This document shows, one piece after another, positions 800-63,342 of a stretch of DNA of 64,000 nucleotides (positions within the stretch are counted from its first letter, which is position 1; the number at the start of each line of letters is the position of its first letter). Position numbers and translations under genes: made by a program. This DNA is from Phallusia mammillata (lineage: Eukaryota). The stretch covers positions 14,384,001-14,448,000 of the forward strand of contig OZ281496.1 in NCBI GenBank assembly GCA_965637545.1, written 5' to 3'. A model generated the notes under the pieces. It saw nothing but the letters and a program-made list of their open reading frames with translations, searched no databases and was not told where the DNA came from.

Positions 800-1791
800 G
801 TAATAAACATTAAATAATATGGACTTGACTAATTCGGTAACGAAACTTAAAAAAACGAAAAAGACACAAATTTTTTTTCTGAATTTTTTTTGTTCAATAT
901 TTGAGAATTGACAGACAATAGACAATATATGTGAGAATAACTCATGGGTTCAAGGCTAAAAAATCAAATAACAAATGTTGGGTACCCATGTGTTTCTGTC
1001 TAAACCAAGAAACGACAAAACATTACGACAATTGTGACCACTGTGTAACGTAACATGGCAAATGACATATACAAACGTGTTATTTTCCAAATGTTAGAAA
1101 AACAATACGTTTATCAATGAAATTGATTTGAAGGCTCTCGTATGTAATTGGCCTCTGCGTTTTAATTAATCTTCTGTTAATTTCTGTTGCCATTTATTGT
1201 AAAGGTTTTGTGGTCACTTTGATCTGACTAGGAAAAGTATTTCCACTACCCGCTGAGTCATCTAGAGAAGCTGTATGGCATTAAAAACAGTCAATCTTTG
1301 ATTTAAAAAAAACAACAATTTGTTTGGTCTTTTAATGATCACAACCAACTGCACAACATCCGGAGTTTCGGCCAGGTATGTTCTAAACTAAAAAATATAT
1401 ATTTTTGTCCTGAAAGTGCCACTAATATTTATAGCAAGTGTAAATGGAATTTTTGGGGATTCCAATTTCTATTATACTTTCGTTTGTTTTCGCAGCCTGT
1501 CAGGAGGTTATGTACGATGTTTCCTCCACGGCAATCAAAGGGATTTATTACAAAACAATGTTACATGTTTTCAAGCGAGACCAGGTAGTATAGGCACAAT
1601 TGACAAAAACTACACACAGAACAGGACCAAAAACTTTTTTGTAGGTATTTTCTCAGTTTCCACCAGTATGTAGGTTGAAGCAAAATGAAAAAAAAAACGT
1701 TTGACAATTAGGGTTACTAAAATACCAAATTCTGTACACAAACACACACATTACGTAACCAAATCACCTGTTAAAGACAATCCGGACTACA

Positions 1792-3030
1792 TTACGTTGC
1801 AACAATTTCAATGCCTTTGCAGTTGTGTGTATTGAGGCAAGACGCTGAAATGAAGTTCTTTGTACATTTAGGGCAATGAAGTTTTTTTAGCTTTGTTTTT
1901 CCATGTTCTGTCTTCATGTGTTCTTGAAACTGTTCTATTCTTGGAAAGCTAAGAGGACATTCGGTGCACTGATGACGTTGCGCTGTTGTGTGAATTTTCA
2001 TGTGACGCAACATGTTTCCGCGCTGACAAATTTTCTTCTCGCAATACTTACAAGCGAATGGCAACTCGCCGGTATGGAGCAGCATATGGTTGTGCAAAGT
2101 TTGACTATATCCGAAACTCTCTTTACAAACTTTGCATTGGTAAGGTTTTTTCTTACAATGAACTTTTTCCTCGTGGGTCGTCGCTTGTGATTTTGTAGCA
2201 AAAGTCTTTGTGCAGACGCCGCAATTGAACTGTTTATTTCTAGTATGCATCACCATGTGACTTTGAAGATGATGCTCTCTGCGGAAATTTTTTTCACAAA
2301 CGTCACATCGGAAAGGTTTTTCGTCATTGTGGACTCTCATATGGGCGATCAAATTGTGTTTGAGGTCCGAAGAGAAAGTGCATTCTGAGCACTGGTGGCG
2401 CTGTTGCATGGAGAGCCCGGGATGTTGTGACTTAAAATGCCAAACTGCTCTTCGCACTCGATGCACTTGTGAAGCGTATCTGTGAAAATGTCGTCGTTGT
2501 ATCGTGGTTTAGAGCAGAAGCAATGTTACCATATTGATAGTATTATTTCTGTAGTAAATAAGGGTAATTTTGTTAATAACATAAAAAGAAGTTTATGCAG
2601 TCCGATTCAAAAGATATTTTACTCTACCCATAAAAATATAAATTTGTAATCCAAAAAGCATTTAAAACAAACCTTCGTGATTTTTTTCGTGAAGTCTACA
2701 AGTTCCTGCTCGTGCAAATTGCTTGTCACAAAACTTGCATCTGTACGGTTTTTCTCCTGTGTGGCCATTTAAATGCTGTTCGTAACTGAATTTCCATTTA
2801 AAAACCTTTTGACAGAAACTACAGACAAACCCCTGTCCTTGATTATGCATAGATCGCTTGTGACTTTTCATGGCACTTGACTGGCTAAACTTTTTCCCAC
2901 ATAAGTCACATTTGTACGGTTGTTCAAAAGTATGCGTGCGAATGTGAAGTTTTAGATGTTCCTTTCGCTTGAATCGTTTCTCACAAATTTCACACGAAAA
3001 CGGGCGTTCCAGATTTTCCTGAAGTGACAT
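1792..3030 (-). pseudogene. Multi-C2H2 zinc-finger gene (~12 fingers), two exons, frame-disrupted
   Basis: ORFs 2662-3030 (4 fingers) and 1792-2466 (7 fingers) have HTGEKP-type linkers. A phase-1 intron at 2480-2672 gives HE-D-TLHKCIECEEQF, but that finger changes frame near 2410-2450. Confidence 0.75.
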
Positions 3031-20280: not shown

Positions 20281-21892
20281 AAGTCAATTCTTTTTAGTCA
20301 AAATAAGTTATAAAATTTGCGTCTACATGAATATAGTGCTTAAAAAGCAGGTAACATTTTGACAGAAGAAGTTGCGACTGTTGTGCACTCACCCGTAACT
20401 AACAGAAAAACAGATGCACAGTCCACAAGATTGCAAGTACGAGTGCTGGACACCCATCTCATTCGTGTGGGCAACAGTGTAGTAATGCACATAGTCATTT
20501 GATTGTCAGCCATGCAAGCAGAAAACATATTTCATGACACAGAGGTTTGTCTTTGCTTCAGAGCGGGGTAGTAATAATTCATTGAAGAATTCAGGGTGTT
20601 ATATACATTTTTTAGGTTTATATCAAGACAATAATGCCGCGGTGTATGTAAATTTGGTACTTCACGTTAAACTCAGTGAATTTGTGTAACATATGAGCCG
20701 TGTGTTAGTTTACAATTACTTTATGGTAACGCGACAAAAAAAAAACAATGGGACGATTGCTGCAGGTCCCATTTATTGTTCGTCTTTTTCTATTAAATGC
20801 AGTCTTAAATTTTTTTACGAGCAAAAAAATATGATTAAATAAAAACTACTCTTTGTATATGTTAAGAAGAGGTGATATTGCTTCGGCTTGTTGTTTGTTT
20901 GTTTGAAACAACAATTTTAGTGAAAACATAATTTTAGTAATAATTGATATTTCGTAATTCCTGTTCAGCAATTCAACAAAGACGTCAGTGATCATGTGAT
21001 TTTAATTTTAGGCGAGAAGTGTTTAATGCATAAGTTTTGAAAGTACAAGTTTCATGAACGCACAAGTTTTAAAACCTGTGATGGCTCTTTGCGTTTTTTT
21101 TTTTTTTTTTTTTGAAGCGCTGACCACAGAAAAGTATTGGGAGTTTGTAAAACCACTCTTCGCATTATGTTTTTTGCTTTCAAAAGTGATTACATGTTTA
21201 AGAAAAATATTGTTACGTATTGCATTGAACTTTTTATTTTCCTTCAAAAATATTTTGCTAAGTCACGTGCCATACAGGCCGAATGTCAAAATCCCGACAG
21301 ACAAAAATTAAAATAACGATAGGTAAATATTAAATTCCGATAATCACTGGAATCTAATCGACGATGATTGATATTCCTATATTAGCGAGTTAAACACCAC
21401 CCACCAACGAATGGGTTAGTTTACTAGCTAATGAATTTTGTCAGTTCCCAATCTTTTAAAATCACACTGGTTTTATAGACTTTTTTTGTACATCCGGCAA
21501 ATTTGTGCAAGTCATCTCGCTACAATCGAGACAGGGCCTCAGAGTATGTATCGTCGGAGAGACGGGCAGGTTTCACTACGCGCCTGAAGGAACAGCAAAG
21601 ATACGTAACAAAGGGATGTCAGGAAATCGGCCATGTTGCTGTAATTGCCAAGAGACAGGGTACAGAAAATGCTGGTTTTTAGAATCTGAAACTCACGCGC
21701 CAAACGATAAACATAAAAACAAATGTTCTAATGCCGATAAGCTATCTTTTACACCCCATAAACACGGAATTTATCTACGTGATCGCCGTTTTTTTCCCTT
21801 TTTTTCACCCTCTTGGTGTTATAACAACGAATGTGTTGGGTAGCTGACATTAACCTCTTGTAGGACGTCAACACGTCTGATAACTTGTACTT

Positions 21893-21908
21893 ATTCTATT
21901 TTAAAAAG
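21893..21908 (+). other. Genomic relic of the ascidian spliced leader at the retrocopy 5' end
   Basis: ATTCTATTTTAAAAAG matches the Ciona SL ATTCTATTTGAATAAG at 14 of 16 positions. It lies at the 5' TSD junction, 33 nt before the ATG. Confidence 0.8.
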
Positions 21909-24900
21909 GTGACATAACTAAGTAAGGTAATTTGATTGAAAATGAATATGAGTAAGATTTTGTTACCTGGAAGTACTGAGAGTTTACAAACTTCCTCACA
22001 TCAGATGTTTTCTACCACACAAAAGTCTGAAGAAAGTATTCACAGTGGGGTTGAAAACAGTCATCTACCTATTCAAATTCCCAAAGAAGAAACAAAATTA
22101 AATAAAGTGAAGAAATTTGGGTCAAACGTCAGCTTGGGAAGAAACAAGGTGGAACCTTTGTTTGATGAAAATCGGCCAACATCAGCATCAGTTGGTGGAT
22201 TTACTCTGCAAAATAGGCCGAAAACGGCTATAGATGAACTTCGTCATCAGCAATTCTATCACAAACTAAAAAAAACCTCCCCTGTTCAATCCACCAACAA
22301 GCCTAAGGAGCAATCAGCACTGATTAAAGAAAAAGAGCCTGACTTGACACAAACTGATGTGTTTCATGAAACAGCATATATTCCATATGAGTATGCTCAT
22401 GCCATGATTAGTAGAATTGTTGATGATATGAAAAGTATGAAACTGAATCATCTCTCAATTGTTGCTAAAATTGAAAATCAGTACCAATCGATTGAAAATG
22501 AAACTCAGACCCAGTTTGAGACATTTCTTCATGCATTACAAGCCAAGCATCAGTCAAAAATTGATTCTTTTCACCATGTGATTAGTATTTTAAAGTCACG
22601 ATTAGCTTCCTCAAGTCAAAGTTTGGACACCATTGACAGCCTGAAGTTGGAAAATAAACAGTTATTACAAGAAAAAACATCATCTTTGAAAGCTAAAAAA
22701 GAAGCAGCCCAAGAAATTTTTTTCATGCCACTTGTAAATGATAAAAAAGAGGTACCTGGGGTTGTGGAAGAAACTGATGAACAAGGGGAAAAGATTGCTG
22801 ATGACTTACAACAAACAGAAAAGTTATTACAACCAATCGCAGAGCAAAATGATGAAGCTGATGCAATTGTCAAACCTTTGAAAACAAATGCATCTGGAAA
22901 AATATTACCAGGTGACTTCACTGCACACCAAAAGGACCAGTCAGGTTTAGATGAGCAATTTGAAGCTCTGAAACCCATGGACGAAGTTAACAGACAAGTG
23001 GATATTGTTGAGGACACAATAGATGTTGATTCTATACTTAAATCTGATGATGTAACACAGTTTCTAGATGAAACAGAAGATGACATCATGAAACCTATTT
23101 AGAAGATTCAAATTATGATCCAGAGAAAACTTCAGAAGGTTTTATATCTATGAAAACAACGGTTGCTGCTGTTGCAATAATGATTGGAGACGGAGATTAC
23201 GAATCTGCACCAGCGGCTAACTTATCAGAAAAAGATGTCTCGAATGTTAAAATGAAAAGACCCAAAACAGCAGAAAAACGTGGGGTAGACCAGCAACTGC
23301 AAAAAAGTCGCAAAATGCTGGTCGAGTTAAAGAAACAGAACGATGCATATTCCAAACAAATACAGTCTCTCGAACGGCAAATTAACTCTGTTGGTCCAAC
23401 AACAGGAAGTTCGGCTGGTGGTGTTGACAAAGACAAAAAGAATGGAAAAGCAAGTTAAGGATTTGGAAAAAAAGCTTGAGTTCGAAAGCAAAAAGCTGGA
23501 AAAAATGAAAATGTCCAACACTGATTTACAAGGCAACTTACAAGCATCCTCTAAGGAATTGGCTGACCTGAAAAAAAGACTTACAGCCCGAGAGCAGGAA
23601 TGTGCACATCTTCGCGAATCTGCTGGTGCTGGAGTGGTGGCGCTACAGCAGGTGCCCGTATTACAAAGCCAAGTCAAAGATTTGACAAATATGAACAAAA
23701 TCCTGACAGAAAACTATAATTCCGAAAGAATCTTAAGAAAAAAGTACTACAACATGGTTGAAGACATGAAAGGAAAAATTCGCGTGTATTGCCGTGTACG
23801 TCCGTTGAGTTCCACTGAAAAGCAAAACAAAAACAAGAGCGCTGTGTTTTCCCCCGATGATTACACGGTAAAAGTCGAGCAAGCCCGGGGAGACCTGAAA
23901 GAGTTTCAATTTGATCAAATATTTACAGAGTCGAATAGTCAAGAAGACATTTTCGAGGATACAAACAGTCTGGTCCAGTCAGCGGTCGACGGATACAACG
24001 TGTGTGTATTTGCAAACGGGCTCTGGAAAAACGTACACCATGCTTGGCGACAAGGAACAAAAAAATCCTGGTATTGCTCCTCGAGCATTCAGAAGAATTT
24101 TTGATCTGATAAAAGCGAACCAACAGAAGTTTAATTTTCGGATTTCCTGCTACATGCTTGAATTGTACAACGAAAAACTGATAGATCTCTTGGGTAAAAG
24201 TCAAAAGTCCGACGTACGACTGGACATAAAAAAGACAACAAGGGGATGGTATTTGTCCAAGGATGCACAGTTGAAACAGCTGAATCTGCCGATGGTTTAT
24301 ACGAAATTTTTTCGAAAGGATCTGAAAGTCGTCATATTGCTTCGACAAACATGAACAGTGCAAGCTCTAGATCCCATCTTGTCATCGGAGTTGTAATCGA
24401 AAGTACAAACTTGGCAACTGGAGCTGTAACACGTGGAAAGTTGAGCTTGGTTGATTTGGCCGGGAGCGAACGTGTAGGCAAAACCGGAGCCACTGCCACT
24501 CAGCTTAAAGAAGCAAATTCTATCAACAAATCTCTCTCAGCTTTGGGAGACGTGATTTCTGCCTTGTCGAGTGAACAAGGGTTTATTCCCTACAGAAACA
24601 ACAAACTTACCATGCTGATGCAGGATTCCCTCGGTGGAAACGCAAAGACACTTATGTTTGTGAACGTTTCACCTGCTGACTACAATTGTGCGGAGAGCAC
24701 AATTTCCCTGACTTACGCATCGCGAGTAAAATTAATTACCAATGACGCCAGCAAAAATGCCGAAATGCGTGAGGTTGTCAGACTGAAACAAATTATTGCC
24801 AAACTGAAAGCTGGAGAGTCGGTTAATGATGTCGACAGTTAAATCTGTGCCAATGCATCATTTTCAAAGTTTTTATCTGTGTACAGCCATATATAACACT

Positions 24901-24981
24901 GCAGTTGTTTTTTTAGTTTTTTTGCTCTCTCACTTGCAGTCACACCGCGTAGTTATTACTGTGCTTATGTACGATTTAGAC

Positions 24982-25503
24982 CGTTGGTTCTTAACCGGTG
25001 GGAAATTTGTTGCATTCAGAGGGAAATTTTGTAAGACGGGAGTAACCACACTCCAGCCCTCCGTCGAATCCGGCCTTAAATTAACTGTTAAAGTTAATTT
25101 ACTACATTTTTTGCAACATCATGTAAGATTAATTTCACCTAATGTTAGAAGGTCATTTGTAACATCACAGACATGTCTAAAATGTCAATGCTTTTGTTAT
25201 TGTGCGCGAATAAATGCCTTTTCTTTGTTGATTTTGATCAAAAAATGAGTAATGCAACAGAAAGGACATTTCAATATCCCACACACTTTTGCTTTCTCAC
25301 GGTAGCACTATTCAAACTAAATAACATTGTAGTAAGCCTATATGGTCCCAACCAAATTGCTTCACAAAAGTATTTCAATCAAATCATTTTTTTGTTTACG
25401 TCGACCACAAAACATCTTTATGAAAAAAAAAAACAGAGGGGGAAATTCGAACTTGGTGATCGGCTTTAGTGGGAAACTATCCCAAAAAGGTTAAGAACCA
25501 CTG
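24982..25503. mobile_element. hAT MITE in the 3' UTR of the retrocopy
   Basis: Termini cgttggttcttaacc / ggttaagaaccactg. Perfect TSD atttagac (24974-24981, 25504-25511). Confidence 0.88.
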
Positions 25504-25826
25504 ATTTAGACCATTCTAAAGCTAGACTCAAGGAAGATTTCTACGCTGTTATATTTGTCAACGCACAAACGTGTCATTCATTTCATTCTTCAACAAAATG
25601 TGTTTAACTTTTTGAAAACAATATACTTGAAAAGAGGTTACACCATATCACTGAATTACTCAATTTTTCAAAAGGTTGTTGTATTTAATAATTGAGTTGT
25701 TTTACAAATCTCCTATTCCTTGCAAGGTCTGGCCCATGTCTTCACAAATTGTTTTGATCTTGCACTTTTCCGAATAAAGACAATCTGCGATTTTAGACAA
25801 AAAAAAAACTTGTACTTATTTGCCGG

Positions 25827-25967
25827 ATTCTATTTTAATAAGAAAATATGTATTTTTTCTTAATAACAGTTATGCTTTGTGGCATCAAGGTTATGTGAAC
25901 TGATTGTTACCTAAAAGAAAATATGATGGAAAAGTACGAAAAAGTGAAGGTTGTTTGGAAAGGGAGC
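25827..25967 (+). pseudogene. Second SL-headed mRNA fragment: 5' UTR plus NEK8-like kinase start
   Basis: ATTCTATTTTAATAAG at 25827-25842 (15 of 16 to the Ciona SL), an 80-nt UTR, then MMEKYEKVKVV(+1 nt)GKGA, similar to NEK8 MEKYERIRVVGRGA. Cut off by a hAT end. Confidence 0.6.
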
Positions 25968-26021
25968 AAAATATCTATGGGGTGCTGCAACTCCGCAGCC
26001 TACTTGCACGAGCCGCCCCTG
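25968..26021. mobile_element. Terminal fragment of the ZMYM1-like hAT family
   Basis: aaaatatct..ggggtgctgca..gcacgagccgcccctg matches the termini at 46288-46339 and 62580-62630. Confidence 0.75.
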
Positions 26022-26032
26022 GTAGAGCTACT

Positions 26033-26137
26033 GACACAGGACCTCACAACACACCGGTTTGGGAATTTTTGAATCAGCAATTATTGTCACCGTAAACGCC
26101 TGTGGAAATTCCAAAACCGGCGTGTTGTGAGTTCGGA
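26033..26137. mobile_element. Small hairpin MITE with 9-bp TSD (Mutator-like)
   Basis: Inverted arms ctcacaacacaccggtttgggaattt / aaattccaaaaccggcgtgttgtgag. Flanking direct repeat agagctact (26024-26032, 26138-26146). Confidence 0.55.
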
Positions 26138-26591
26138 AGAGCTACTTACACCATAACTCACTTTCACTGTTAGCAAAATTGGGTAACTAACACCCAAAAT
26201 CATTGGGTACTTCTATGCCAAACAGGGTACATTCGTGGGGACACCCAATATATTTTTTTGGGTGATTGATACCCAAACCAACTTGGGTATCATACTTACT
26301 TACCCAATTTTCGTTTTTGGGTATGATGATTTTCCACCCAAACGCTATATTGGGTAGCTGTGGTTTGTACCTTATTTAATGTTCTGGGTACATTCGTGGG
26401 GACACCCAACTTTGTTGGGTAAAGATTACCCAAATAAAATTCTATCCAGCTTTCACCACACAAATATAGAAAAATGTGTATTTAAAAGAACAGTGCTGGA
26501 AAAAAAAGTGTATTTAAAAGAACAGTGCTGGAAGAAAAACAAACAAACAAACAAACAAACAAGGAATTGTTAAAGAAATCACTGCAAAGCA

Positions 26592-28709
26592 TTAAACAGT
26601 TAGGCCTATTTTCATTGCCAATTCTTTGACAGAATCATTAACACCTGCTGTCTGGATACCTAACCAATAGGTTTGAAGAAACTGAAGTGCCAAATGAACA
26701 TGAGGACAATATTCATAGTTAAACACGTAGTAGTATGCAAACAAAGCAATATATGCCTGTGTTAGGCTTTTCACTTCTATCAGTGGTTGTTTTTCACAAA
26801 AAGGCGGATTTTCTTGACTTCTTCTACACTGCCAAATACTGCAATGAATGGCTGGTGGCGATCCGGAACAGCTTTAATGATGTCATCTATAGTTGTGTTT
26901 TCCTACAAAAGTAAAATATGTCGTAAGACTGAATTCAAAGAAGACCTATTCAATGTCTCAACAACAATTTATTGCCACCACAACTTACCGGGTACAGATC
27001 AAGCAGATACCTCTCAGTGCAGTATTCCTTTTTGGTGTTTGACCGAATAATATTGCACAAAAGCCAAGATCCAAAAATGATCTGTTGATCTATAAAAATA
27101 AATTGTCGAGTGAATACCGTTGTTGGTAATATGATGTCAAACGAAAATGAGCATGTAATTTTGACATTTTTTTTAAAAGTTTTTTTTAATAAAACCAAAT
27201 ATCTTACCAACTGGGAATTGCTCTTCATTGTTTAATGGGATCTTTTGCAAAATTCGTTTGACCTGCACAGATGTGGTCTTTTGTTTGGCATAGTTGACAA
27301 TGCTCATGAAAATGTTGGACTGCAGATAACTCTCTTTGTCGAAGCGCTGTATCTTTTTAAATTCTCTAACCAACTGGAAAACAAAAAACAACAAATCAAT
27401 TATAGTGCTGCAGCCGTAGAAAAGAATGTATTTTTTACCATTTAAAACACACATATAAACACATACAAACAACACAATGCCGAAATAGTCATTGTTACAC
27501 TAAGAGTATGACAGAATAGATATGATGGAGAGTTATTTACCTCATTATACCCCGACAAAGCTGGCCATTCTTGACATGCAATTTTTGGGCTAGGATTAGA
27601 AGAAAAATAACTCCTTCTCATAGAAAACGTTTGATCCATCATATCAGAAATTTTGCGCTGATTTCTCATGCCAGCTTGCTTTTTGAACTCTTCTTGCAAC
27701 ATCTGGAATAAAATCAGTTTTTGCTCAAAAAATATTCATGGTAGCGGTTTAAAAACTGCTTTAAGGAATGAGCTATGCTTGGTCACACAACACGGAATAT
27801 TCAAATGTTGCAATTCAAAACAACGCAAACTTACTTTTTTTTTTTCCGCAACCAAAATTTCTAAAGCAAAAGAAATATACATTAAATAAATATACACACA
27901 AGGTATATACAATGTCAAATTCTACCTTGGCATCTTCTTCATTAAGGCCCAAAGTTGCCTTTCCAAGTTTTATAAATGAGGTTAACGCTGATTTTTTTGT
28001 TGATCTGGTAGGGAAGCTATAAACAAAACATCAATTACAACAGATTATAAACTATATTGCAACTTAAATTCTTGTACCTTTCATACTTTTTCATAACACG
28101 TATTATCTCGGTGGTGACTTCCCGCTTGCCCTTTTCTGTAAGTGTACCAGTCCGTATAAGCTCTTTTGCATGAAATCCGAAATCACACATTTCTATAGGA
28201 AACACTTTGGGGACAGTCTTTGTTAGATTTGGACGATCTTCCAAATCATGGTTTGAGGTTGAACTTTCTGCACTGGTGGATATTTCACTTGAGTCGTCCA
28301 AGCTAGTGCTTGAACTTGACAATGACATGTTGCCAAGATCAGACTTCTCAGAATTTGTAAGTTCCTGATAAACTTTCAGCAAACTTCCTTTTGGCAAATT
28401 CGGAAATATTTTAAACAATATGTCAAGCTGACTGACAGCTCCAAGCGCCTTCCCATCAATTTTGTTGTCTAAAAATTGCAGTAGCCTATATTAGCAGGAC
28501 ATACATATTTTTTATTCTTCTCCAAAATTTAGCAGCAGAAGTAAAAACACTATATTTGTGACTGACTGATTTGGATTATGACACATTGGCTTACCATAAA
28601 AGGCTTTGCAAACATTTTCCCGTTCGCTTTCATCTTCGTCTTTCAACGCCAAGGACACTATGTCTACAACGTCTTTAACACTGAGGTTCATAATTTCACT
28701 AATATTCAA
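26592..28709 (-). CDS. CACTA accessory gene: SAM-domain (SAMD3-like) protein, multi-exon, possibly disrupted
   Basis: SAM-like ENKIDGKAL..L..IFP, TFSMRR..WPAL and C-terminal LFAYYYVFNYEY..LQFLQ..LGI. A poly-A run near 27835-27845 may break the frame. Confidence 0.7.
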
Positions 28710-28848
28710 GGTTCAGATGTTTAAAAAGGTTAATTTCCTGTGCAAACAAACAGAAAATATCAATAAAGTTTAAAACCACGCGGCACAGTCAGAAATTCGC
28801 AAAGGAATGAACTTCCTGGGCAAGATTTTTGCCGCGCAAATCTGGGTG

Positions 28849-28911
28849 TGACGTAACTTTTCGCGCCGAGTTTCCGATTTGATTTTATACTCCTAAACTT
28901 TTCGCGCCAAT
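28849..28911. promoter_or_regulatory. Candidate E2F/CRE/CCAAT motifs in the CACTA bidirectional promoter
   Basis: aacttttcgcgcc occurs twice, with TTTTCGCGCC at 28858-28867 and 28899-28908. TGACGTAA at 28849 and CCAAT at 28907, all between the two divergent genes. Confidence 0.45.
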
Positions 28912-29129
28912 CGATTCTTTTTAATTTGTGAAATTAAAAAGTTACAAAAGATGAAAAAAATAAACGTTTTGAAGATAAACTAATGAAGTTGAAAATCTTT
29001 TTAAGTGAAGATCAGAAAGTAGCGAAACGTAAGGACGTTACGCTCATCCGAATTTAACTAAACAGGTTTATTTTGGCTGAAACTGGTTCACTTCATATGG
29101 TTCATAGTCATAAATCATGATCAGTTGAC

Positions 29130-32100
29130 ATGTGTAGTACTAGTGTGGAAAGAATTTTGTTCAAGTGCACATTTTGTGCTAACTGTTTTAAAAGTAGAAT
29201 GGCTTTAAAAAGGCATGTGTTTTCTTCCCATTGCTATGACAATACTTTCAAGCTAATTTGCAACATAGATGGTTGCTCGATGCAGCTAAATGACAAAGTT
29301 TCATTGCGACAACACATTAGAAGATGGCACTGCGGGAAGTCCTGGCATATGCCGACTTGTTGGTACAGATACTCGTCCAGCAACACTGCCTCCAACATAG
29401 AAGAAATTACCGTTCCAAATGACACACCAATGGAAGAAGAAACTGGTTCATGTGGTAGTGATTGTGACACTACTACTTGCAGTGATGCAGCTTGTGAAGA
29501 TTCTTGTATTGATCAGGACATTATTACTTACAGAAACACAATAAAAAACTTGCACAAAAGAAAGCAGTTAATGGCTCTTTCACTAACCAAATTAAAGGTT
29601 GATTGTAATTTGACTGAGTCGGCTTTACATTTAGTAGAAACGTGGGCAGAAGGCCTACTAGAAGAGAGTATTCGAACTATAATAGGAGGAATTAAGGCAA
29701 CGCCACCATTGTCTTCAAGCCATAAGGAGTTATTTCAACTCGCAATGGGATTAGCCAACCCCTTTCATGATATTGTGACTGAATATCAAAGAAAAAAACT
29801 TCTTCCAACATAGGTGGTGTACTGACCCAGTGGGTAGACAATTAAACACTCCGTGTATCTGACTCTAATAATTAAACTATCGCTGCCTAAACAAACCTAA
29901 CAAGACGCAAAGCTAAATTAACGTTCCCACATTATATTTCAATAAAGCATGCCACGAAAATGCCTCTTACGGCTAAACACGCAACACAAAAGTCACGACG
30001 CCAACGCGTGAGCTACACCCAAGCAAGCTACTGTAACTAATAAACTTGGTAACTTATGTACTGAAGTTAAATCTAAATTGACGCGGTTTATATAGCGACC
30101 AGGTCAAATGTTGTTATGTAAGCGCAGTCGTAAAAACGTACGCCCGAGAAGATGAACTAAGTTCTAAACCGCAATTATTCTTTAAATTGCTTTACAGAAG
30201 TGTCACATATAACATGGCTGGAGGTTAATTTAGACGTGGTTCTTGTTAACACGTTAAAAGCGATACAACAATAGCCTTAAGCCAGTATATGACCAGCGTG
30301 GTGATTAGAAAACAGGTTTAAAAGCCGGTCAAGCTTTTGTGTAGAAAAAAGGTGAGGTTTGACCGAGTTTGACCGGGACAATATGACACGACAATTATAC
30401 GAATTAAAATGTTTTGAATTAAAAAGTCCAAAGTCCGATACAGTGGTAAGTGTGATTTGCCATGGTTGCCAATATTGTATTTTTTAACTGAAGTATACTT
30501 AAACAGACTCCTATACGACATATATTATTTGAATGTCCGAAAGATGGTTCGAAAGAAGGCGTGGAGTACCATTCACTTGAGTATATTTCACTTATTGCAC
30601 TTTTAAAAACATTGCTGGAAAATTCCAGTCTCTATGACTGGGTAAGTATATTTGCAGCATTAGATTATACAAAGTGTGCTTCGTGGAAAATATTCATCTC
30701 TAAATTTAACTAAGATCATCGAATCAGAAGAGGATTTGGATGATGTGGATGCATATCAAAGTTTTTCACATGGAGAGTATGCAAATATGCATCCTCTTTT
30801 TTCTGAAGCAAGACCAAACTTACAACTTTTATTTTACTATGATGGATTTGAGGTTGTTAACCCGCTTGGATCCAAAACAGGCACACACAATATGGGTACA
30901 ATAAGCAGTTTTGTTTGTTGTATTTCGCATTCAAGTCTTTTTTGTTTCTCTTTCAAGGTGCAATATATTTTTTGATACTCAACACTCACCCCAAACTTAC
31001 ATCAGCTGTAACTAGAATTTTTCTCAGTACCCTATTTTATACTAAAGATTTAAAACACCCTCAGATTGGTTGGGAAAAAATTTTGCAGCCACTTAATCAG
31101 GACATAAAGCAACTTGAAACAGTAAGTAAAATGTAGTGACAACTGTAACTTAATGTATATATATTTCTGTGTGTGTGTTTTGCAGATGGGTGTTCAGTTC
31201 AATTATAAGGGTTCAGAAGTGACTGTTCGAGGGACAGTTGCACAAATATCATTGGATAATTTAGCTGCACACTCCTTTCTAGGCTTTACCGAGCGATTTT
31301 CAGGGTTAAATACATTCGTATCAAGATACTGTACGTGCACTGGAAATGACATTCAGACAAAGGTAAAAGGCTTTTTATGTGTTGCTTATTAAGTAAACTA
31401 TTATAAAAACTTTTCGTTTGCAAAGTGTTTAAATTTGTTAGCATAAAGTGTTCTCCAAATGTTTTAAACAGAATTCCTACAAACAATGTCAACTACGAAC
31501 CCCAGAAATGTACAACGAGTCAGTAGTAGTAGCACAGGCAACAGGGAAACCTCATCACGGTATAAAATTTCGATGTCCATTGTTATCTCAGTATTTTCAC
31601 CCAGCAGAAAATTATGCTGCTGATGTCCATCATGATTTATTTGAGGGTGCAATTCCATACATTCTTAAACTAACTTTACAGGTAGTTCGATTGTTAGCAT
31701 ATAATCATGAGTACATCTTGCCCTAAACTTTTTTTTCTTTTAAACAGAATCTGGTAATTAAAAAAAGACTGTTAAGTCTTGATTGTCTGAATAACAAAAT
31801 TGATTGCTTCAAGTATGGTATTGACCTAAAAAACAAACCATCTCATATTTCTTATGGCAAGTTGATTGATGATTCAAACAAAAATTTGCGCCAAATCGGT
31901 ATGACATGTGTGTATGTTTGTTCAACCTAGTTTATTTTTGCTGTATTTGTTGTTTTGTCAGCATCACAATATTGGTGTCTATTCCGATGTTTGCCAATGT
32001 TGATTGGAAGCTACATTCCTGATGAAGATGAAGTTTGGGAGTTATATACAATGTTTTGTGGAATTGTTGACATATGTTGCGCACCATTTGTTTCTGGGAC

Positions 32101-32830
32101 CACAGTAACTGAACTGGAGTTAGAATTGCAAAGTTTTTTTAAAATGTTTCATGCCAGGTATCCTGATGCAACAATTACGCCAAAATTGCATTTTTTACTA
32201 CACTATCCAAGATTAATTAAAAAAATTGGTCCTCTAATACATTTTTCATGCATGAGATTTGAGGCCAAGCATAAAAGTTTAAAGCAAATTGTCACCAGGA
32301 GTAACAATTACATTAATGTTCCACACACCATTGCTGTCCAGCATCAAGTGAAATTAGCATCAAATATTATTGAAACTGACATATTTTCATGCTCTTTCGA
32401 AATTAAAAAGTTTACAACTGTAAATTCACGTGATGTGTTTGGATCAAGTAGTAGCCCCACTGATGAAACTTATGTTAAAAAAACTGACAACCTCGTATTT
32501 GAAGGGATAACATACTCTGTACCTTGTGTTGTATGTGTACATGTTTGTTCTGATGGGGTGACAGATTTCCTGTCAGTAGATGCTGTTTATTTGAGTTCAT
32601 CATGTGGTCCAATACTTGTAGGGCAGTTGCTTTGTGTTAATTATTACAATGAACATTATCATGCATGGTCCGTAGAACCCACATCAGTGAAAGCGTATGT
32701 TCTTCAAAAAAAATTATTTTATCCTCACCCTTTGTGCATAGTTTCCCCATTCGGTGTATTTGAGAAATTTGTGTGTCCAAAATTTAGATTAGAGCCATTG
32801 AAATGTTCTGCCTGTATGTATTTGAGTTAA
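29130..32830 (+). CDS. CACTA/EnSpm transposase with N-terminal C2H2 fingers, multi-exon
   Basis: YYDGFEVVNPLG, DNLAAHSFLGFTERF, DVHHDLFEG, ITPKLHFLLHYP, SCMRFEAKH. Most introns join in phase. An in-frame TAG at 29811-29813 precedes an unexplained ~690-bp interval. Confidence 0.85.
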
Positions 32831-33261
32831 CTGAATTGTGTGGAAATAAAAAAAATATTTTAGGATCATGGTTGCCATGTGGGAGAAACAATGGTTGTGA
32901 TTTTGCATTAGTTTGCTGCAGCTGCAATAACAGACATTTTTTGGTTAGCAATACCCAAGTGTCTGAAAATACTAACGATTTTTTTTGGGGTACCTGTTGA
33001 CCATACCCAAACTATTTTTTGGGGTACAAAACCTGAGCTGAATATTTGGGTAAAAAAGCCGACTACCCAAAAAAAACTTCTCACACAATTGGGTGGTACA
33101 ATTTTCTACCCAATGTTTAATTGAAGTTATTTTGGGTAATCATACTACCCAACTATACTTGGGTGAATTTTAACGATACCCAAAATATTTCCGCACTTTT
33201 TTGGGTAAACAAACACACTACCCAAAACTTTAAAATTTTGTACCCAACATTTTTGACAGTG

Positions 33262-33480
33262 TTCGATAGGTGACGCAGGAGCTGAATTATTTATTTAGCG
33301 GCTGAATGGGGGTAAGGTGGGGAAGTAAGGTTTTAAAATTTTACATTAATAAGTAAATGTTTGGGTTATTTTCATTGAATTTTTGATCATAATACCTAAC
33401 CCCAACAGCCCTAACCGTAGGCATGGTTTGAGATATACCGTTTTCAATCGGATATGTGCTCTTTGCGCCACCTATCGAAA
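33262..33480. mobile_element. MITE with TIR ttcgataggtg(a/g)cgca
   Basis: TIRs at 33262-33277 and 33464-33479, internal cctaacc motifs. The CACTA element sits at the tip of its left TIR. Confidence 0.75.
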
Positions 33481-33865
33481 ATTTGCTGAATGTGCGGCTG
33501 AAGTGAATTATGGTGTTAGTAGATTTTGCTGTGAGTTTTTGTGTTAGTAGCTCTACCATCAAATTATACGTTGTTATTTGAACTGTCGCGAGAAACTACA
33601 TTAACGGTGCGACTTAAAGTCCAGAAGTATGGCAATAAACTGTGGACCTAGCATCAAGGCAAACAACACACAGGCATACATCTGGAACCTGTCCTACAAA
33701 TGAGACTATGGGCGCTAATGGGTTTAACTAATCACTTGGATTGACATTGCAACCCTTTTTGGTGTGTTCGTAAAAGTGAGGAGATTTTGGCTACTTGTCG
33801 TGTGTGGCCTCGTAATTCACAGGCATGTTGCTTTACCATTGCGACAAGCTTGATTGATTCGTTAC

Positions 33866-35960
33866 CAGTGGCGGCTCGTGCCTGACATTTCTGGGGGTGC
33901 TGCTCCAAATTTTAACCTTTATTTAACATATATAAGTTGGCAATATATAGAAAAGCCACATTTCTAGATTTCCAGCCATTGTTTGTGTAGAAAAACGAGT
34001 AATACAAATCTTAATTAGTAACTCCATTGTAACGTAATTTTCGTTACGCATTAATGTACACGAGTGTAAACAGCAGACAGTGTATCACTGGGGAGTTTTG
34101 TTTACTTGCATGGCAACGGGCCAAACTCAACAACATGCGGTAATAATGTGGCACAAAAACACACGTGACACAGATTCAAAATAAAGCGAATGTTAATACG
34201 GCAAAACACTCACAACAATATATTGAACAAAATAGTAATAATTGGTCGAAAAGTATTTCAGTTAGACAACATTTAAGAATAACTGGTTATAACAATGACC
34301 ACTAAGTAACACACCTGCTATTCAGTCATTAATATGGTCATGTTTCATTTGAGTAACTTATAGTCACAGTCATTGTTTCAACGCATCTTTTTGACACTTC
34401 ACAGATTATTGCCACACAAAAAACTAGCCACAAATTTTTATTGGTATCATAACTGACAAATTTTACAACCACATTACATTTGTGCCGGAACTTGGTTATT
34501 TAAACATATTTTCTTTAAATTTTTGTGTACAGACTAACAATTGTCTTTCAGTTTGCTTATAATTTCCTTTTTTAAAGTGCAATACTCCTCCAAGCTTTTA
34601 AATTTACAACAATCTCACGTAAATTTGACCCATATGATGAAACCTTGTGCTTCCTTTTTACAACCAAAATGAATCAGAAAGTTATAGTTTGGGCAAAATA
34701 ATTGATAGCTAAGAAACTGTTTGTTTCAATTTAGTGCTAGCACTGCAAATACAAGTTATTTGGTGTCCTTAGAAAAGCTTGCATCCTTTTCAGTGTTGAA
34801 AAGAACCGTTTTGCCTTAAGGACTCATGGAAATTGCAAAAAGGATTTTTCATCTTAGTAATTTAACTTGTCAAAACATCATCGAGATTATTTTCAAAGTA
34901 ATCATGAACATCAGATCTACAGAAACATCTTTATTTCAGTAACTAGCTTTTCTTTGTCAACAATAGGATATGCTTGGTGGCCACTACTATCTCCTCTGTA
35001 GAATGTTCATTCTTAAGAAACACTTCCTGTGAAGCAATTTTGCAGCTACTGTTTAGAGAAACAGTACATGTCCAGTATATCAATACACATGATTGCATTT
35101 GGTTGCAAATACTGTCCACATGGTGTGTTAAGAAGCCAAAACTTTAAATGGTAATCACTCAGTTATTTCAAAATTCCTGTTGGTTCTGCATTTGATATTG
35201 CCTGAATTTCAGTGAGGCATTTAACTTCACAGTCACAGAGCTATTTTTCTTTGGTAGCATTCAGAACTAAAACTGAGTATTTCTTGTTGTTGCCTATTCC
35301 TGCATGACATATTTGGAATAGCAGATGTTTTATCCCATTCTGTCTTAAAACTTTTTAATTCAGTTATTTATTATCAATGTTTATAATAATGTATTTATCA
35401 TAAAGGTTAATCGTGATAACTGCAAAAACTGAAGCCCACTAACAGTCATCTTAAAAAGTCACGACTAACCTTCAAACAAATAAATTGATAGATGGCAAAA
35501 TAGTTATTTAACTATACTCACTGCCGAACTTAAGAACATAGTACACGGGTTTTGCTTTGGCACACAATAAAACCCGGAACAGACGAATACATGTTGGATT
35601 GCCGGCTCACACGCTACGTGATTAATGGAGCTGCGCCAGCCGCAGCACCCTGTCGCCTATTTCGCCCGGCATGTAGCTTTTCCAAGTGCGCACAGCGACA
35701 AAACGTCACGAAACTGGAACTGCAGCTTACTTATTCAGCATAGATCACTTATTAGTTTCATATTTTTTTAAAAAGGTGATCAAGGGGCAAATTATGCTTA
35801 TCATATATTGCCAACGAATAAAAAAATAAAAGTTGTATGTAATATTATAGTAGGAGGTAAAAATAGGTAAAGATAAAAATAAAAAATAAAATAAAAATTA
35901 GGTAAAAATACACAAAATAAAAAGCTATTCACTAAACCTATTTACCAGGTGTATTTAAAA
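33866..35960 (-). mobile_element. Degenerate ZMYM1-like hAT element
   Basis: Terminus cagtggcggctcgtgc at 33866. Eroded dimerisation motif near 34760-34830. Segments 35020-35090 and 35540-35870 are homologous to 45240-46290. Confidence 0.6.
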
Positions 35961-45231: not shown

Positions 45232-45239
45232 AGTGCATT

Positions 45240-46339
45240 CTTAAGAAACACTTCCTGTGAAGCAATTTAGCAGCTACTGTTTAGACAAACAGTACATGTC
45301 CATTATATCATACTCATCTTTTTCATCATGTCCACGTAAGGTAGTTTCAAAGTTTCCACAGAACAAAATGCAGTCTATTATTTTGGACAAAATTTCACGA
45401 TTTCTTTTTTCACTTTTTTGTTGTGTTCAATAATTGAAAGTCTATATACGCCTCACTAAGTTTTTCCTTAACATTTATAGTTCCCGTGAAACATCATTGT
45501 CCACATGCTTCTTTGACATCTCATGTTTTTCTGCTTTCTCACCTATTTTGGCTACATTTGTAAAACCATCTTTTGTCCGTCATTTTTCATCACCTCCAAA
45601 CAGCAAACATGGAAAACAGAACAGTGCATTTTTAACTTCACAACCACAAAACCATTTTTTCTTTTGATACCATTTAGAATTAAAACAGCGTATATATTTC
45701 TTGTTGTGGCTCATTCCTGGCTGACAAAGTTGAATATCAGGCGTTGGACGCTCTTTTTTCTTTATACTTACCTTTTCAGCACTTGATAACTGCGAAATCT
45801 TAAGTTGCTGAAGCTCACTTACAGTCACCGAACTAGAATCTTGAAAAGCCATGATTAACCTTTCAATCAAAAACTGTAAAAATGATTAAAAAAGAATAAC
45901 TGTCGTACTGTACTCATTGTCGAACCTGATGGTACACGTGATTTGCTTTGGCACACAATAAACGCGGAACAGACAACTACTTCCGGGTGCCAAGGTCACA
46001 CGCTACGTGAATGGTGGAGCTGCGCGAGCCGCAGCACCCTGGCTCCTATTTCGCCCAGCATGTAGCTTTTCAAAGTGCGCATGCGCAGAACCGCAAAACG
46101 TCATGAAACGTCAGAAAACTGGAGCTGCAGTTCCAGCATAGATATACATTAGTGTTTCCCCAAAAATTTTTTTTAATGACAAAAAAGGTGATTAGGGCGG
46201 AAATTATGCTTGTTATATATTGCTAAGGAATAAAAAATAAAAATAATGAAAGTTATTTGTAATATTATGGTAGGTGTATTAAGTAAAAATATCTAGGGGG
46301 TGCTGCAGCTCCGCTGCACCCTAGCACGAGCCACCCCTG
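45240..46339 (-). mobile_element. Non-autonomous ZMYM1-like hAT (TTF zinc-finger 5' part)
   Basis: RPTPDIQL..YIRCFNSKWYQKKKWFCGCEVKNALFCFPCLLFGG. Terminus gcacgagccacccctg ends at 46339. Closely similar inverted copy at 62580-63342. Confidence 0.85.
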
Positions 46340-62579: not shown

Positions 62580-63342
62580 CAGGGGCGGCTCGTGCTAGGG
62601 AGCTGCAGCACCCCCTAGATATTTTTACTTAATACACCTACCATAATATTACAAATAACTTTCATTATTTTTATTTTTTATTCCTTAGCAATATATAATA
62701 AGCATAATTTTTGCCCTAATCCCTTTTTTTTCATTAAAATTTTTTTTTTTGGAAACACTAATGTATATCTATGCTGGAACTGCAGCTACAGTTTTCTGAC
62801 GTTTCGTGACGTTTTGCGGTTCTGCGCATGCGCACTTTGAAAAGCTACATGCTGGGCGAAATAGGAGCCAACGCCTGATATTCAACTTTGTCAGCCAGAA
62901 ATGAGCCACAACAAGAAATATATACGCAGTTTTAATTGTAATTGGTATCAAAAGAAAAAAATGGCTTTGTGGTTGTGAAGTTAAAAATGCACTGTTCTGT
63001 TTTCCATGTTTGCTGTTTGGAGATGATTAAAAATGCTGGACAAAAGATGGTTTTACAAATGTAGCCAAAATAGGTGAGAAAGCAGAAAAACATGAGAAGT
63101 CAAAGAAGCATGTGGACAATGATGTTTCACTTTCACTTTGGGAACTGTAAATATTAAGGAAAAACTTAGTGAGGCGTATAGACTTTCAATTATTGAACAC
63201 AACAAAAAAGTGGAAAAAAATCGTGAAATTTTGTCCGAAATAATAGACTGCATTTTGTTCTGTGGAAACTTTGAAACTCCCTTACGTGGACATGATGAAA
63301 AAGATGAGTATTGATATACTGGACATGTACTGTTGTCTAAAC
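62580..63342 (+). mobile_element. Non-autonomous ZMYM1-like hAT, inverted copy of 45240-46339
   Basis: Terminus caggggcggctcgtgctagg. TTF finger WLCGCEVKNALFCFPCLLF and PLRGHDE. Extra internal deletion near 62870. Confidence 0.85.

What the first reader, a model, noticed from the sequence alone, without database searches (positions are those of the whole stretch)
25807..25967. A second SL-headed mRNA copy (NEK8-like) begins 6 bp after the first retrocopy
Seen: after the 3' TSD and tgccgg comes ATTCTATTTTAATAAG (15 of 16 to the Ciona SL, not followed by GT), an 80-nt UTR and MMEKYEKVKVV(+1)GKGA, which is then cut by a hAT end. Inference: two independent SL-capped mRNAs were inserted head to tail at almost the same site. 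That suggests a retroposition hotspot, or that an existing SL relic helped the second integration. Both genes are plausibly expressed in cilia or germline, which would explain heritable copies. The kinase call rests on only ~14 codons.
Basis: partly seen in the sequence, partly recalled or inferred. Interest (0 to 1): 0.8.

Follow-up and report, generated by a model that had tools for sequence, protein, structure and literature searches.

The report
Spliced-leader-tagged NEK8 mRNA fragment relic
A dead 141-base DNA copy of the very start of a sea-squirt NEK8 kinase mRNA, still carrying the 16-base spliced leader, sits at a broken transposon end 6 bases from a full kinesin retrocopy. The pair arose once and was then duplicated six times, so it gives no evidence for a retroposition hotspot.

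Summary
Window 25827-25842 matches the ascidian spliced leader (SL) at 15 of 16 bases. It is followed by the 5'UTR and first 14 codons of a kinase. The parent gene is on another chromosome (C1, about 12.541 Mb, minus strand). Its exon 1 starts exactly after an AG acceptor at the base where the SL is joined in the copy, and its other exons encode a kinase domain plus RCC1 repeats, so it is NEK8-type.

The interpretation needs correction in three ways.
- Only the SL plus 125 nt of exon 1 is present. There is no poly(A), no target-site duplication and no other NEK8 exon.
- The fragment does not stop at a hAT tip. It is joined 54-57 bp inside the right end of a non-autonomous hAT. The flanks on both sides of "SL-NEK8 + hAT stub" are contiguous sequence of a Penelope-like element tail. 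I therefore read the fragment as RNA-derived filler laid down when the hAT's left end broke. A classical retrocopy later truncated by a deletion is the main rival.
- The whole composite, including the kinesin retrocopy and its duplication, occurs six times on chromosome C3 at 93-97% identity. It records one ancestral pair of events.

The SL G-to-T change and the frameshift are private to this copy. This scan had already noted SL-tagged retro-sequences elsewhere in this genome.

The parts
21634..21881 (+). Remnant of a Penelope-like element (PLE) tail with a degenerate hammerhead-type motif. This is the host sequence into which everything below was inserted.
   Evidence: It matches many loci at 70-93% identity. 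It aligns with intact relatives in L020(-)2172 and L003(-)1988/L023 that carry CTGATGA...GAAAC. Rfam gave no hit.
21882..21895 (+). 5' target-site duplication (AACTTGTACTTATT) of the kinesin retrocopy. Its last ATT overlaps the SL.
   Evidence: The same 14 bases recur at 25807-25820.
21893..21908 (+). SL relic heading the kinesin retrocopy. It has 2 mismatches here and is the exact SL in the two copies held in cE.
21909..25808 (+). Processed, frame-broken retrocopy of a kinesin with a C-terminal motor, ending in a 10-A tail. It contains a window-private MITE at 24986-25502.
   Evidence: Pfam Kinesin and Microtub_bd. The parent lies on C7 at 14.238-14.302 Mb and matches in more than 20 separate exon-sized pieces at 89-97% identity. 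The MITE-free site is seen in copy cD.
25807..25820 (+). 3' target-site duplication of the kinesin retrocopy.
25821..25826 (+). TGCCGG, the continuation of the PLE tail. Its last G is probably the only surviving base of the hAT's left target-site duplication.
   Evidence: Joining 25821-25826 to 26023 onward gives TGCCGGTAGAGCTA. The PLE relative reads TGCCGGAAGAGCTA, a 13 of 14 match; 28 of 20000 shuffles score as high.
25827..25842 (+). SL relic with 1 mismatch. It is the exact SL in all five other copies (shown directly by the pattern match for the sixth, unread, copy).
25843..25967 (+). The first 125 nt of NEK8-type exon 1. The 5'UTR is 25843-25925 and the true ATG is 25926. There is a late ATT-to-ATG change at 25923-25925 and a private extra T within 25954-25956. 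Base 25968 (A) could belong to either side of the junction.
   Evidence: Parent exon 1 is at C1:12541066-12541196 (-). The consensus of five copies matches the parent at 116 of 119 aligned bases, with 3 indels.
25968..26021 (+). The last 54 bp (positions 2224-2277) of a 2277-bp non-autonomous hAT element, ending at its terminal inverted repeat tip.
26022..26029 (+). GTAGAGCT, the right-hand 8-bp target-site duplication of that hAT and the resumption of the PLE-tail-like sequence.
   Evidence: The same octamer follows an independent hAT copy in L027. Contiguity test.
26166..33261 (.). A 7.1-kb insertion private to this copy, with CACTG...CAGTG termini and TTGGGTA subterminal repeats. It is context only.
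   Evidence: Copies cB, cC, cD and cE join 26165 directly to 33262; the empty site was read in cB and cD.
33866..35854 (+). A second, older hAT copy (positions 1-2212) that lacks its last ~65 bp. Its left flank is different (TTCGTTAC).

Best explanation
Window 25827-25967 is a non-functional DNA copy of the capped 5' end of a trans-spliced NEK8-type mRNA: the 16-nt spliced leader plus the first 125 nt of exon 1.

Shown:
- The RNA origin.
- The identity of the parent gene.
- The absence of the rest of the mRNA, of a poly(A) tail and of a target-site duplication.
- The position of the fragment, between a Penelope-like element (PLE) tail on the left and the last 54 bp of a hAT transposon on the right.
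- The presence of the whole composite in six paralogous blocks on one chromosome.

Inferred order of events:
1. A hAT inserted into the octamer GTAGAGCT of a PLE tail.
2. The hAT's left end was later broken, most simply by transposase. The break lost 7 nt of the left duplication and hAT positions 1-2223.
3. The gap was bridged by DNA synthesised on a NEK8 mRNA. Synthesis was primed at about nt 125 and ran off at the 5' end of the leader. This is filler or endonuclease-independent cDNA capture.
4. Separately, a kinesin mRNA was inserted 6 bp upstream by ordinary target-primed reverse transcription, giving a 14-bp duplication and a poly(A) tail. The order of steps 3 and 4 is unknown.
5. A block of at least 20 kb containing all this was then duplicated to six sites between 11.9 and 16.7 Mb of chromosome C3.

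This copy later acquired the SL G-to-T change, a 1-nt frameshift, a MITE and a 7.1-kb transposon. The fragment has no function. Its value is as a record of trans-splicing and of an RNA-derived repair or insertion event.
For: RNA origin and parent gene:
- The parent locus reads ...ttgcag|AAAATATG...GGAGCATTTGG|gtaggt. The copies read SL|AAAATATG...GGAGCA.
- RNA contigs confirm a 177-nt GT..AG intron right after that exon.
- Downstream exons hit Pkinase and RCC1.

Only the 5' end is present:
- blastn and tblastx of the whole parent gene against the window hit only 25841-25968.
- No downstream repeat of the left flank and no A-run were found.

The neighbouring hAT:
- The full element is 2277 bp with a 16-bp terminal inverted repeat starting CAG.
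- Four of four full copies have 8-bp target-site duplications.
- The window stub covers positions 2224-2277 only.

The flanks were once contiguous:
- TGCCGG joined to TAGAGCTA matches the PLE tail relative at 13 of 14 bases, and 28 of 20000 shuffles score as high.
- An independent hAT insertion at the same octamer exists in L027.

Single origin:
- The same junctions occur in four other sequenced copies.
- TGCCGG+SL occurs in exactly six places, all on C3.
- The blocks are collinear over window positions ~20000-40600 at 93-97% identity.

Ages are similar. The NEK8 fragment consensus matches its parent at 116 of 119 bases. The kinesin retrocopy matches its parent exons at 89-97%.
Against: - The capture step is inferred from anatomy alone. 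The left copy of the hAT duplication is represented by a single G, so the earlier complete hAT insertion is deduced, not seen.
- Microhomology at the NEK8/hAT junction is only 1 nt.
- A second hAT 750 bp downstream is broken at almost the complementary position (1-2212). The model does not explain this.
- No read-level evidence of the SL on the parent mRNA was obtained; the contigs run unspliced through the acceptor.
Confidence: 0.6

Rival explanations
1. Classical retrocopy, later truncated. A full-length SL-NEK8 mRNA was inserted by LINE target-primed reverse transcription next to the hAT. A later deletion then removed everything from NEK8 nt 126 through its poly(A), its duplication and hAT positions 1-2223.
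For: Hundreds of SL-headed sequences exist in this genome. A full-length one with poly(A) and a duplication lies 6 bp away. Full-length copies ending at the first SL base are what this pathway gives. A single deletion explains the right junction.
Against: The retrocopy's 5' junction would have to fall by chance within the 7 nt between the PLE flank and the hAT head, because the PLE sequence is intact up to the first base of the hAT duplication. No trace of the 3' part exists in the window. No other strong match to the parent gene was found among the 40 of 365 genome candidates that were scored.
Confidence: 0.25
2. Hotspot or single complex event. The PLE tail, or the SL relic, attracts retro-insertions, or both cDNAs were captured in one repair event. 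On this view the 6-bp spacing is not a coincidence.
For: Two different host mRNAs ended up within 20 bp of each other inside the last ~45 nt of a PLE tail. Under uniform insertion of about 700 relics in 240 Mb, my estimate of the expected number of pairs within 20 bp is about 0.04. Listed SL relics on C1 show 7 neighbour gaps under 20 kb against 1.3 expected.
Against: This is only one ancestral event, since six copies arose by duplication. The kinesin insertion has standard hallmarks and its junction microhomologies do not involve the SL relic. The clustering on C1 is partly periodic, which points to duplicated units. Of ten other SL-headed loci examined, none sits behind a convincing PLE tail.
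Confidence: 0.08
3. The leader belongs to the PLE, not to the NEK8 mRNA. Some PLE relatives carry an SL downstream of their hammerhead-type motif, and NEK8 exon 1 might have been joined to it in some other way.
For: In L020 a PLE tail is followed after 11 nt by an exact SL and then CTAACACC. L003 and L023 have an SL-like remnant at the equivalent place.
Against: TGCCGG followed directly by the SL (up to 1 mismatch) occurs only in the six block copies. The SL is joined to NEK8 exactly at the parent's AG acceptor, which only trans-splicing explains.
Confidence: 0.04
4. Chance resemblance: an AT-rich 16-mer and a short open frame with no RNA origin.
For: The region is AT-rich, and only 14 codons of coding sequence are present.
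Against: Shuffles give 0.10 matches per window against 2 found. The reversed control finds 0 against 681. A parent exon matches at 116 of 119 bases and starts at an AG acceptor.
Confidence: 0.01

Closest known systems
Spliced-leader relic retrogenes of dinoflagellates (DinoSL relics; PMC6050394, PMC5585692)
   Same: A DNA-encoded spliced leader at the 5' end marks a sequence as reverse-transcribed from a mature trans-spliced mRNA.
   Different: This case is in a chordate, an ascidian-type genome with the 16-nt Ciona-type SL. It is a dead 141-bp fragment, not a gene, and there are no stacked leaders. My searches of the held library found no paper on SL relics in tunicate retrocopies.
Endonuclease-independent (non-classical) LINE-1 or cDNA insertion at double-strand breaks (Sen et al. 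2007, PMC1920257)
   Same: There are no target-site duplication and no endonuclease-type hallmarks. Target DNA was lost at the site, and a role in break repair is suggested.
   Different: The inserted RNA copy is a host mRNA 5' end rather than a LINE. The break is inferred to be a hAT end. The enzyme that did the copying is unknown.
Filler DNA in Ac/Ds-type hAT derivatives (PMC3260210)
   Same: A hAT element has lost internal sequence, foreign DNA stands in its place, and that DNA is occasionally gene-derived.
   Different: Here one terminus is lost as well, so the product cannot transpose. The filler carries a spliced leader, so it is RNA-derived rather than copied from genomic DNA.
Classical processed pseudogene made by LINE target-primed reverse transcription
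   Same: This is the neighbouring kinesin copy: a full-length mRNA copy with an SL head, poly(A) and a 14-bp target-site duplication.
   Different: The NEK8 fragment lacks poly(A), lacks a duplication and lacks its 3' 95%.

Membership tests
SL-tagged copy of a trans-spliced mRNA | The leader is joined exactly at the AG acceptor of an intron-containing parent gene. | tested here: met
   The parent reads ttgcag|AAAATATG and the copy reads SL|AAAATATG. RNA contigs confirm intron 1.
SL-tagged copy of a trans-spliced mRNA | The leader is identical to the organism's own SL RNA exon. | tested here: met
   The genome has more than 3000 SL+GT sites, including 553-bp tandem arrays. The exact SL is present in the five other copies.
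Classical LINE-mediated processed retrocopy | A 3' poly(A) tail. | tested here: not met
   The fragment ends at exon-1 nt 125, directly on hAT sequence.
Classical LINE-mediated processed retrocopy | Flanking target-site duplication. | tested here: not met
   The left flank is not repeated downstream.
Endonuclease-independent or break-repair cDNA capture | No duplication, a 3'-truncated insert, and loss of target DNA at the site. | tested here: met
   Seven nt of the hAT duplication and hAT positions 1-2223 are missing, while the flanks are otherwise contiguous.
Endonuclease-independent or break-repair cDNA capture | Microhomology at the junctions. | tested here: inconclusive
   One shared A at the NEK8/hAT junction and one possible A at the PLE/SL junction.
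hAT superfamily (the adjoining transposon) | 8-bp target-site duplication and short terminal inverted repeats starting CAG. | tested here: met
   Four of four full copies have 8-bp duplications. The repeats are CAGTGGCGGCTCGTGC and CAGGGGCGGCTCGTGC.
hAT superfamily (the adjoining transposon) | hAT transposase. | tested here: not met
   The 2277-bp element has no ORF over 161 aa, so it is non-autonomous. No autonomous partner was searched for.
NEK8 (the parent gene) | Kinase domain at the extreme N-terminus followed by RCC1 repeats. | tested here: met
   The gene starts MEKYEKVKVVGKGAFG. Exon-by-exon Pfam gives Pkinase and then RCC1.
NEK8 (the parent gene) | Orthology to NEK8 rather than NEK9 shown by a tree. 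| not tested
   Only exon pieces were searched. NEK1 is the third-best PDB hit. The joined protein was not built.
Penelope-like element tail (the host sequence) | Hammerhead ribozyme in the tail. | tested here: inconclusive
   The CTGATGA...GAAAC core is present in relatives and degenerate in the window. Rfam gave no hit in the window or in L020.
Penelope-like element tail (the host sequence) | PLE reverse transcriptase and GIY-YIG endonuclease in full-length members. | not tested
No full-length member was fetched.

The most novel reading that the evidence does not exclude
A natural germline case of mRNA-templated repair of a DNA-transposon break in a chordate. After the left end of a hAT was cut, synthesis primed from the remaining hAT stub copied a NEK8 mRNA up to its capped spliced-leader end, and the product was ligated to the flank. 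The spliced leader would then serve as a built-in tag. With it, RNA-derived filler at repair junctions could be counted genome-wide in tunicates and separated from ordinary LINE-made retrocopies.
Probability: 0.35. Interest if true: 0.6.

Novelty: new member of a known kind. Interest (0 to 1): 0.38.

Why it matters
The fragment gives independent DNA-level support that this NEK8-type gene is SL trans-spliced at a defined acceptor. It adds a 3'-truncated case without a target-site duplication to the SL-tagged retro-sequences of this ascidian-type genome. The leader lets RNA-derived DNA be recognised even when poly(A) and duplications are missing. A census of such fragments could therefore measure how often mRNA copies are used as filler at DNA breaks in an animal germline. 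It also carries a warning: adjacent SL relics must be counted once per duplication family before any claim about hotspots.

Tried and rejected
Ideas tested and dropped:
- Helitron 3' end. A hairpin followed by CTGG|T suggested this. It was rejected once full copies showed terminal inverted repeats and 8-bp duplications.
- LINE or SINE tail. Rejected for the same reason.
- One hAT split in two. I asked whether the hAT stub (2224-2277) and the downstream hAT (1-2212) are one element split by a large insert, or permuted by tandem duplication. This was rejected because the flanking octamers differ (GTAGAGCT against TTCGTTAC) and sequence beyond the block's left end in other copies does not match the window beyond 40595.
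- SL RNA gene promoter. I compared the sequence upstream of the SL with ten SL+GT loci and found no shared flank.

Searches that gave nothing useful:
- Rfam and tRNA scans of 19000-41000 found nothing. Rfam on L020 and L015 also found nothing.
- The genome search for other NEK8-derived DNA was swamped by an intronic repeat. Only 40 of 365 candidates were scored, so the blank is weak.
- The RNA runs are contigs only. They confirm intron 1 but cannot show the leader.
- The protein atlas returned only a generic kinase label.
- The literature searches found no tunicate SL-relic retrocopy paper.

Limits on the work:
The sixth copy (C3:11.878 Mb), the SL tandem array and the block ends could not be read.

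Full report
**1. Observation.**

The window is G000:C3:14384001-14448000 of a 240-Mb genome. Its SL RNA exon is the Ciona-type 16-mer. SL+GT occurs more than 3000 times, including 553-bp tandem arrays.

- a 10-A tail at 25799-25808;
- the 3' copy of a 14-bp target-site duplication at 25807-25820, with its 5' copy at 21882-21895;
- tgccgg at 25821-25826;
- an SL-like 16-mer at 25827-25842 with one mismatch, followed by AA;
- 80 nt to an ATG at 25923;
- an open frame that translates as MMEKYEKVKVVWKGS.

SL-like 16-mers are not a by-product of AT-rich DNA. The window has 2 matches where shuffles give 0.10. The genome has 681 exact SL copies not followed by GT, against 0 for the reversed pattern.

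**2. Parent gene.**

The 125 nt after the leader match six places in the genome. One of them, C1:12541066-12541196 on the minus strand, is a normal exon.
- It is preceded by ...ttgcag and begins at exactly the base that follows the leader in the copies.
- It is followed by a gtaggt donor.
- RNA-derived contigs from four runs skip 177 nt there with GT..AG ends, which confirms intron 1.
- These contigs run on unspliced upstream of the acceptor. They therefore do not show the leader itself.

Downstream open stretches of the same gene were searched one by one by reference. They hit Pkinase and then RCC1 repeats. NEK1 is the third-best solved structure for one kinase exon. A kinase that starts at residue 4 and is followed by RCC1 repeats is the NEK8 (or NEK9) architecture. 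The N-terminus without an extension fits NEK8; that point rests on my own knowledge.

blastn and tblastx of the whole gene against the window find only 25841-25968. Only the leader plus 125 nt of exon 1 is present, stopping 5 nt short of the exon's donor.

**3. One event, six copies.**

The other four matches all lie on C3. Each carries the same kinesin 3'UTR, A-tail, duplication, tgccgg, exact leader, NEK8 piece and right-hand junction. The blocks are collinear with window positions ~20000-40600 at 93-97% identity. The exceptions are two insertions private to the window: 24986-25502 and 26166-33261.

The string TGCCGG+SL occurs in exactly six places, all between 11.88 and 16.68 Mb of C3 and in both orientations. 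The sixth place lies beside a sixth kinesin copy.

The leader's G-to-T change and the extra T that shifts the frame are private to the window copy. The ATT-to-ATG change that gives "MM" is shared with one other copy only.

The consensus of five copies matches the parent exon at 116 of 119 aligned bases, with three indels. The kinesin copy matches the exon-sized pieces of its parent gene on C7 at 89-97%. The two RNA-derived pieces are therefore of similar age, and both predate the block duplications.

**4. The right-hand junction.**

The sequence from 25968 onward is the end of a high-copy repeat, with 470 first-look candidates. I first took it for a Helitron end because of a hairpin followed by CTGG|T. 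Full-length copies showed otherwise.
- The element is 2277 bp long.
- It has 16-bp terminal inverted repeats beginning CAG.
- Four of four copies have perfect 8-bp target-site duplications.
- It has no long ORF.

However, the window holds only positions 2224-2277. NEK8 is joined to an internal point of the element, and the element's tip, at 26021, faces away from NEK8. No NEK8 sequence follows the tip. This is not a retrocopy interrupted by an insertion.

**5. The left-hand side.**

The sequence upstream of the kinesin duplication (21634-21881), the duplication itself and tgccgg all align with the tails of a repeat family. Intact members of that family carry a CTGATGA...GAAAC hammerhead-type core followed by a ~50-nt distal part containing ...CTGCCGGAAGAGCTA.... 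Rfam gave no hit, so I use the name with that caveat.

The key point is a contiguity test. I joined the base run left of the leader (...TGCCGG) to the bases right of the hAT tip (TAGAGCTA...), counting the G once. This reproduces the PLE tail at 13 of 14 positions without a gap, and only 28 of 20000 shuffles score as high. The "SL-NEK8 + hAT stub" unit, about 195 bp, therefore sits in an otherwise continuous PLE tail.

GTAGAGCT after the hAT tip is the expected 8-bp duplication. An unrelated locus, L027, has another hAT copy at the same octamer. Of the left copy of that duplication, only the first G remains.

**6. Mechanism.**

The most economical history has five steps.
- A hAT inserted at GTAGAGCT in a PLE tail.
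- Its left end later broke, at the place where a hAT transposase cuts.
- Seven nt of flank and 2223 bp of the element were lost.
- The gap was bridged by 141 nt copied from a NEK8 mRNA, ending at the first base of the leader by run-off at the RNA's 5' end.
- The product was ligated to the flank.

This has the hallmarks reported for endonuclease-independent retro-insertions at breaks: no duplication, no endonuclease-type site and loss of target DNA (PMC1920257). It also resembles filler DNA in Ac/Ds derivatives (PMC3260210). All of these steps are inferred from anatomy.

The main rival is a full-length retrocopy, later truncated by a deletion reaching into the hAT. That history needs the retrocopy's 5' junction to have fallen by chance within the 7 nt next to the hAT head.

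The kinesin copy is an ordinary target-primed insertion. It has a 14-bp duplication, an AA microhomology at the A-tail and an ATT microhomology between the leader's first bases and the target. Its second-strand cut lies 6 bp from the NEK8 leader, but nothing ties it mechanistically to that leader.

**7. Hotspot question.**

The six copies descend from one arrangement, so there is a single observation. Under uniform insertion of about 700 relics in 240 Mb, my estimate of the expected number of pairs within 20 bp is about 0.04. The spacing is therefore mildly surprising, but insertions are not uniform.

Among the 49 listed relics on C1, 7 neighbour gaps are under 20 kb against 1.3 expected. Several of these are periodic, at about 5.9 kb, which indicates duplicated units.

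Many SL 16-mers also belong to repeats rather than to gene retrocopies:
- a small cluster of SL-gene-like units in L015;
- a PLE-type family carrying GATTATAC-SL-CTAACACC in L020.

A proper test needs the full coordinate list with sequences, and I could not fetch that.

**8. Comparison and novelty.**

Leader relics as tags of retroposed mRNAs are well described in dinoflagellates (PMC6050394, PMC5585692). My three searches found no such report for tunicates, though the library is incomplete. This scan has already noted several SL-tagged retro-sequences in this genome (s1-375384, s1-375378, s1-375379, s1-382245).

The present item is a new member of that kind: a dead 5' fragment. Its one interesting feature is that it looks like RNA-derived filler at a transposon break.

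**9. Limits.**

- The RNA evidence consists of contigs only.

Noticed in passing
window 33866-35854: A second, older hAT copy covers element positions 1-2212 and lacks its last ~65 bp. This is almost exactly complementary to the 54-bp stub at 25968-26021. Both breaks fall in the A-rich AAGTAAAAATAT stretch. After the break, hAT#2 continues into an A-rich microsatellite-like run. The flanking octamers differ, so the two are not halves of one insertion. The coincidence is unexplained.
   Followed up: partly
window 26166-33261: A 7.1-kb insertion private to this copy. It has CACTG...CAGTG termini, a 2-3 bp duplication and many subterminal TTGGGTA repeats, which looks CACTA/EnSpm-like. One ORF (29130-29813) has a weak C2H2 zinc-finger hit.
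   Followed up: partly
window 24986-25502: A 517-bp MITE private to this copy, inside the kinesin 3'UTR. Its inverted repeats are GGTTCTTAACC and it has a 10-bp duplication, GATTTAGACC. The empty site is seen in copy cD.
   Followed up: partly
L021:2223-3234 (-), i.e. C1 about 12.533-12.534 Mb: An uninterrupted 337-aa ORF that looks like an Aurora-type kinase lies about 1.6 kb downstream of the last NEK8 exon, on the same strand. It could be an intronless gene or the downstream gene of an operon.
   Followed up: no
L005:1626-2600 (upstream of the NEK8 acceptor on C1): RNA contigs in four runs continue unspliced for at least 1 kb upstream of the trans-splice acceptor while splicing intron 1. 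This fits an outron or an upstream operon gene.
   Followed up: no
L020 (-)2172..2113 and (+)1298..1330 (C3 about 12.612-12.613 Mb): A Penelope-like family carries an exact SL 8 nt after the predicted hammerhead cleavage site (GTC|GATTATAC-SL-CTAACACC). One copy starts exactly at GATTATAC after an A-run, as expected for a cDNA of the ribozyme-cleaved RNA.
   Followed up: partly
L015 about 1250-1800 (-) (C1 about 31.416 Mb): Four SL-like 16-mers lie within 550 bp in tandem units of ~130-280 nt, with a conserved upstream ...ggttgcaatga.cgtcctgaa. This looks like a small dispersed cluster of SL RNA gene variants. One unit has the same G-to-T variant as the window.
   Followed up: no
window 45233-46339 (+) and 62580-63342 (-): Two more 5'-truncated copies of the same 2277-bp non-autonomous hAT family. 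The family had at least 775 first-look candidates genome-wide, and scored copies are 92-96% identical to the window copy (most 94-96%).
   Followed up: yes
L023 about 426 (-) and about 1750 (+) (copy cC, C3 about 16.675-16.677 Mb): In copy cC only, the kinesin 3'UTR carries a 1.6-kb insertion. Within it are two hammerhead-bearing PLE tails in opposite orientation.
   Followed up: no
window 26023-26165 + 33262-33551: The sequence after the hAT tip starts with a PLE-tail-like motif (TAGAGCTACTGACAC). The motif recurs directly at 26137 and inverted at 33536-33551, around a ~96-bp palindromic core. It may be a MITE-like derivative of the PLE tail.
   Followed up: partly
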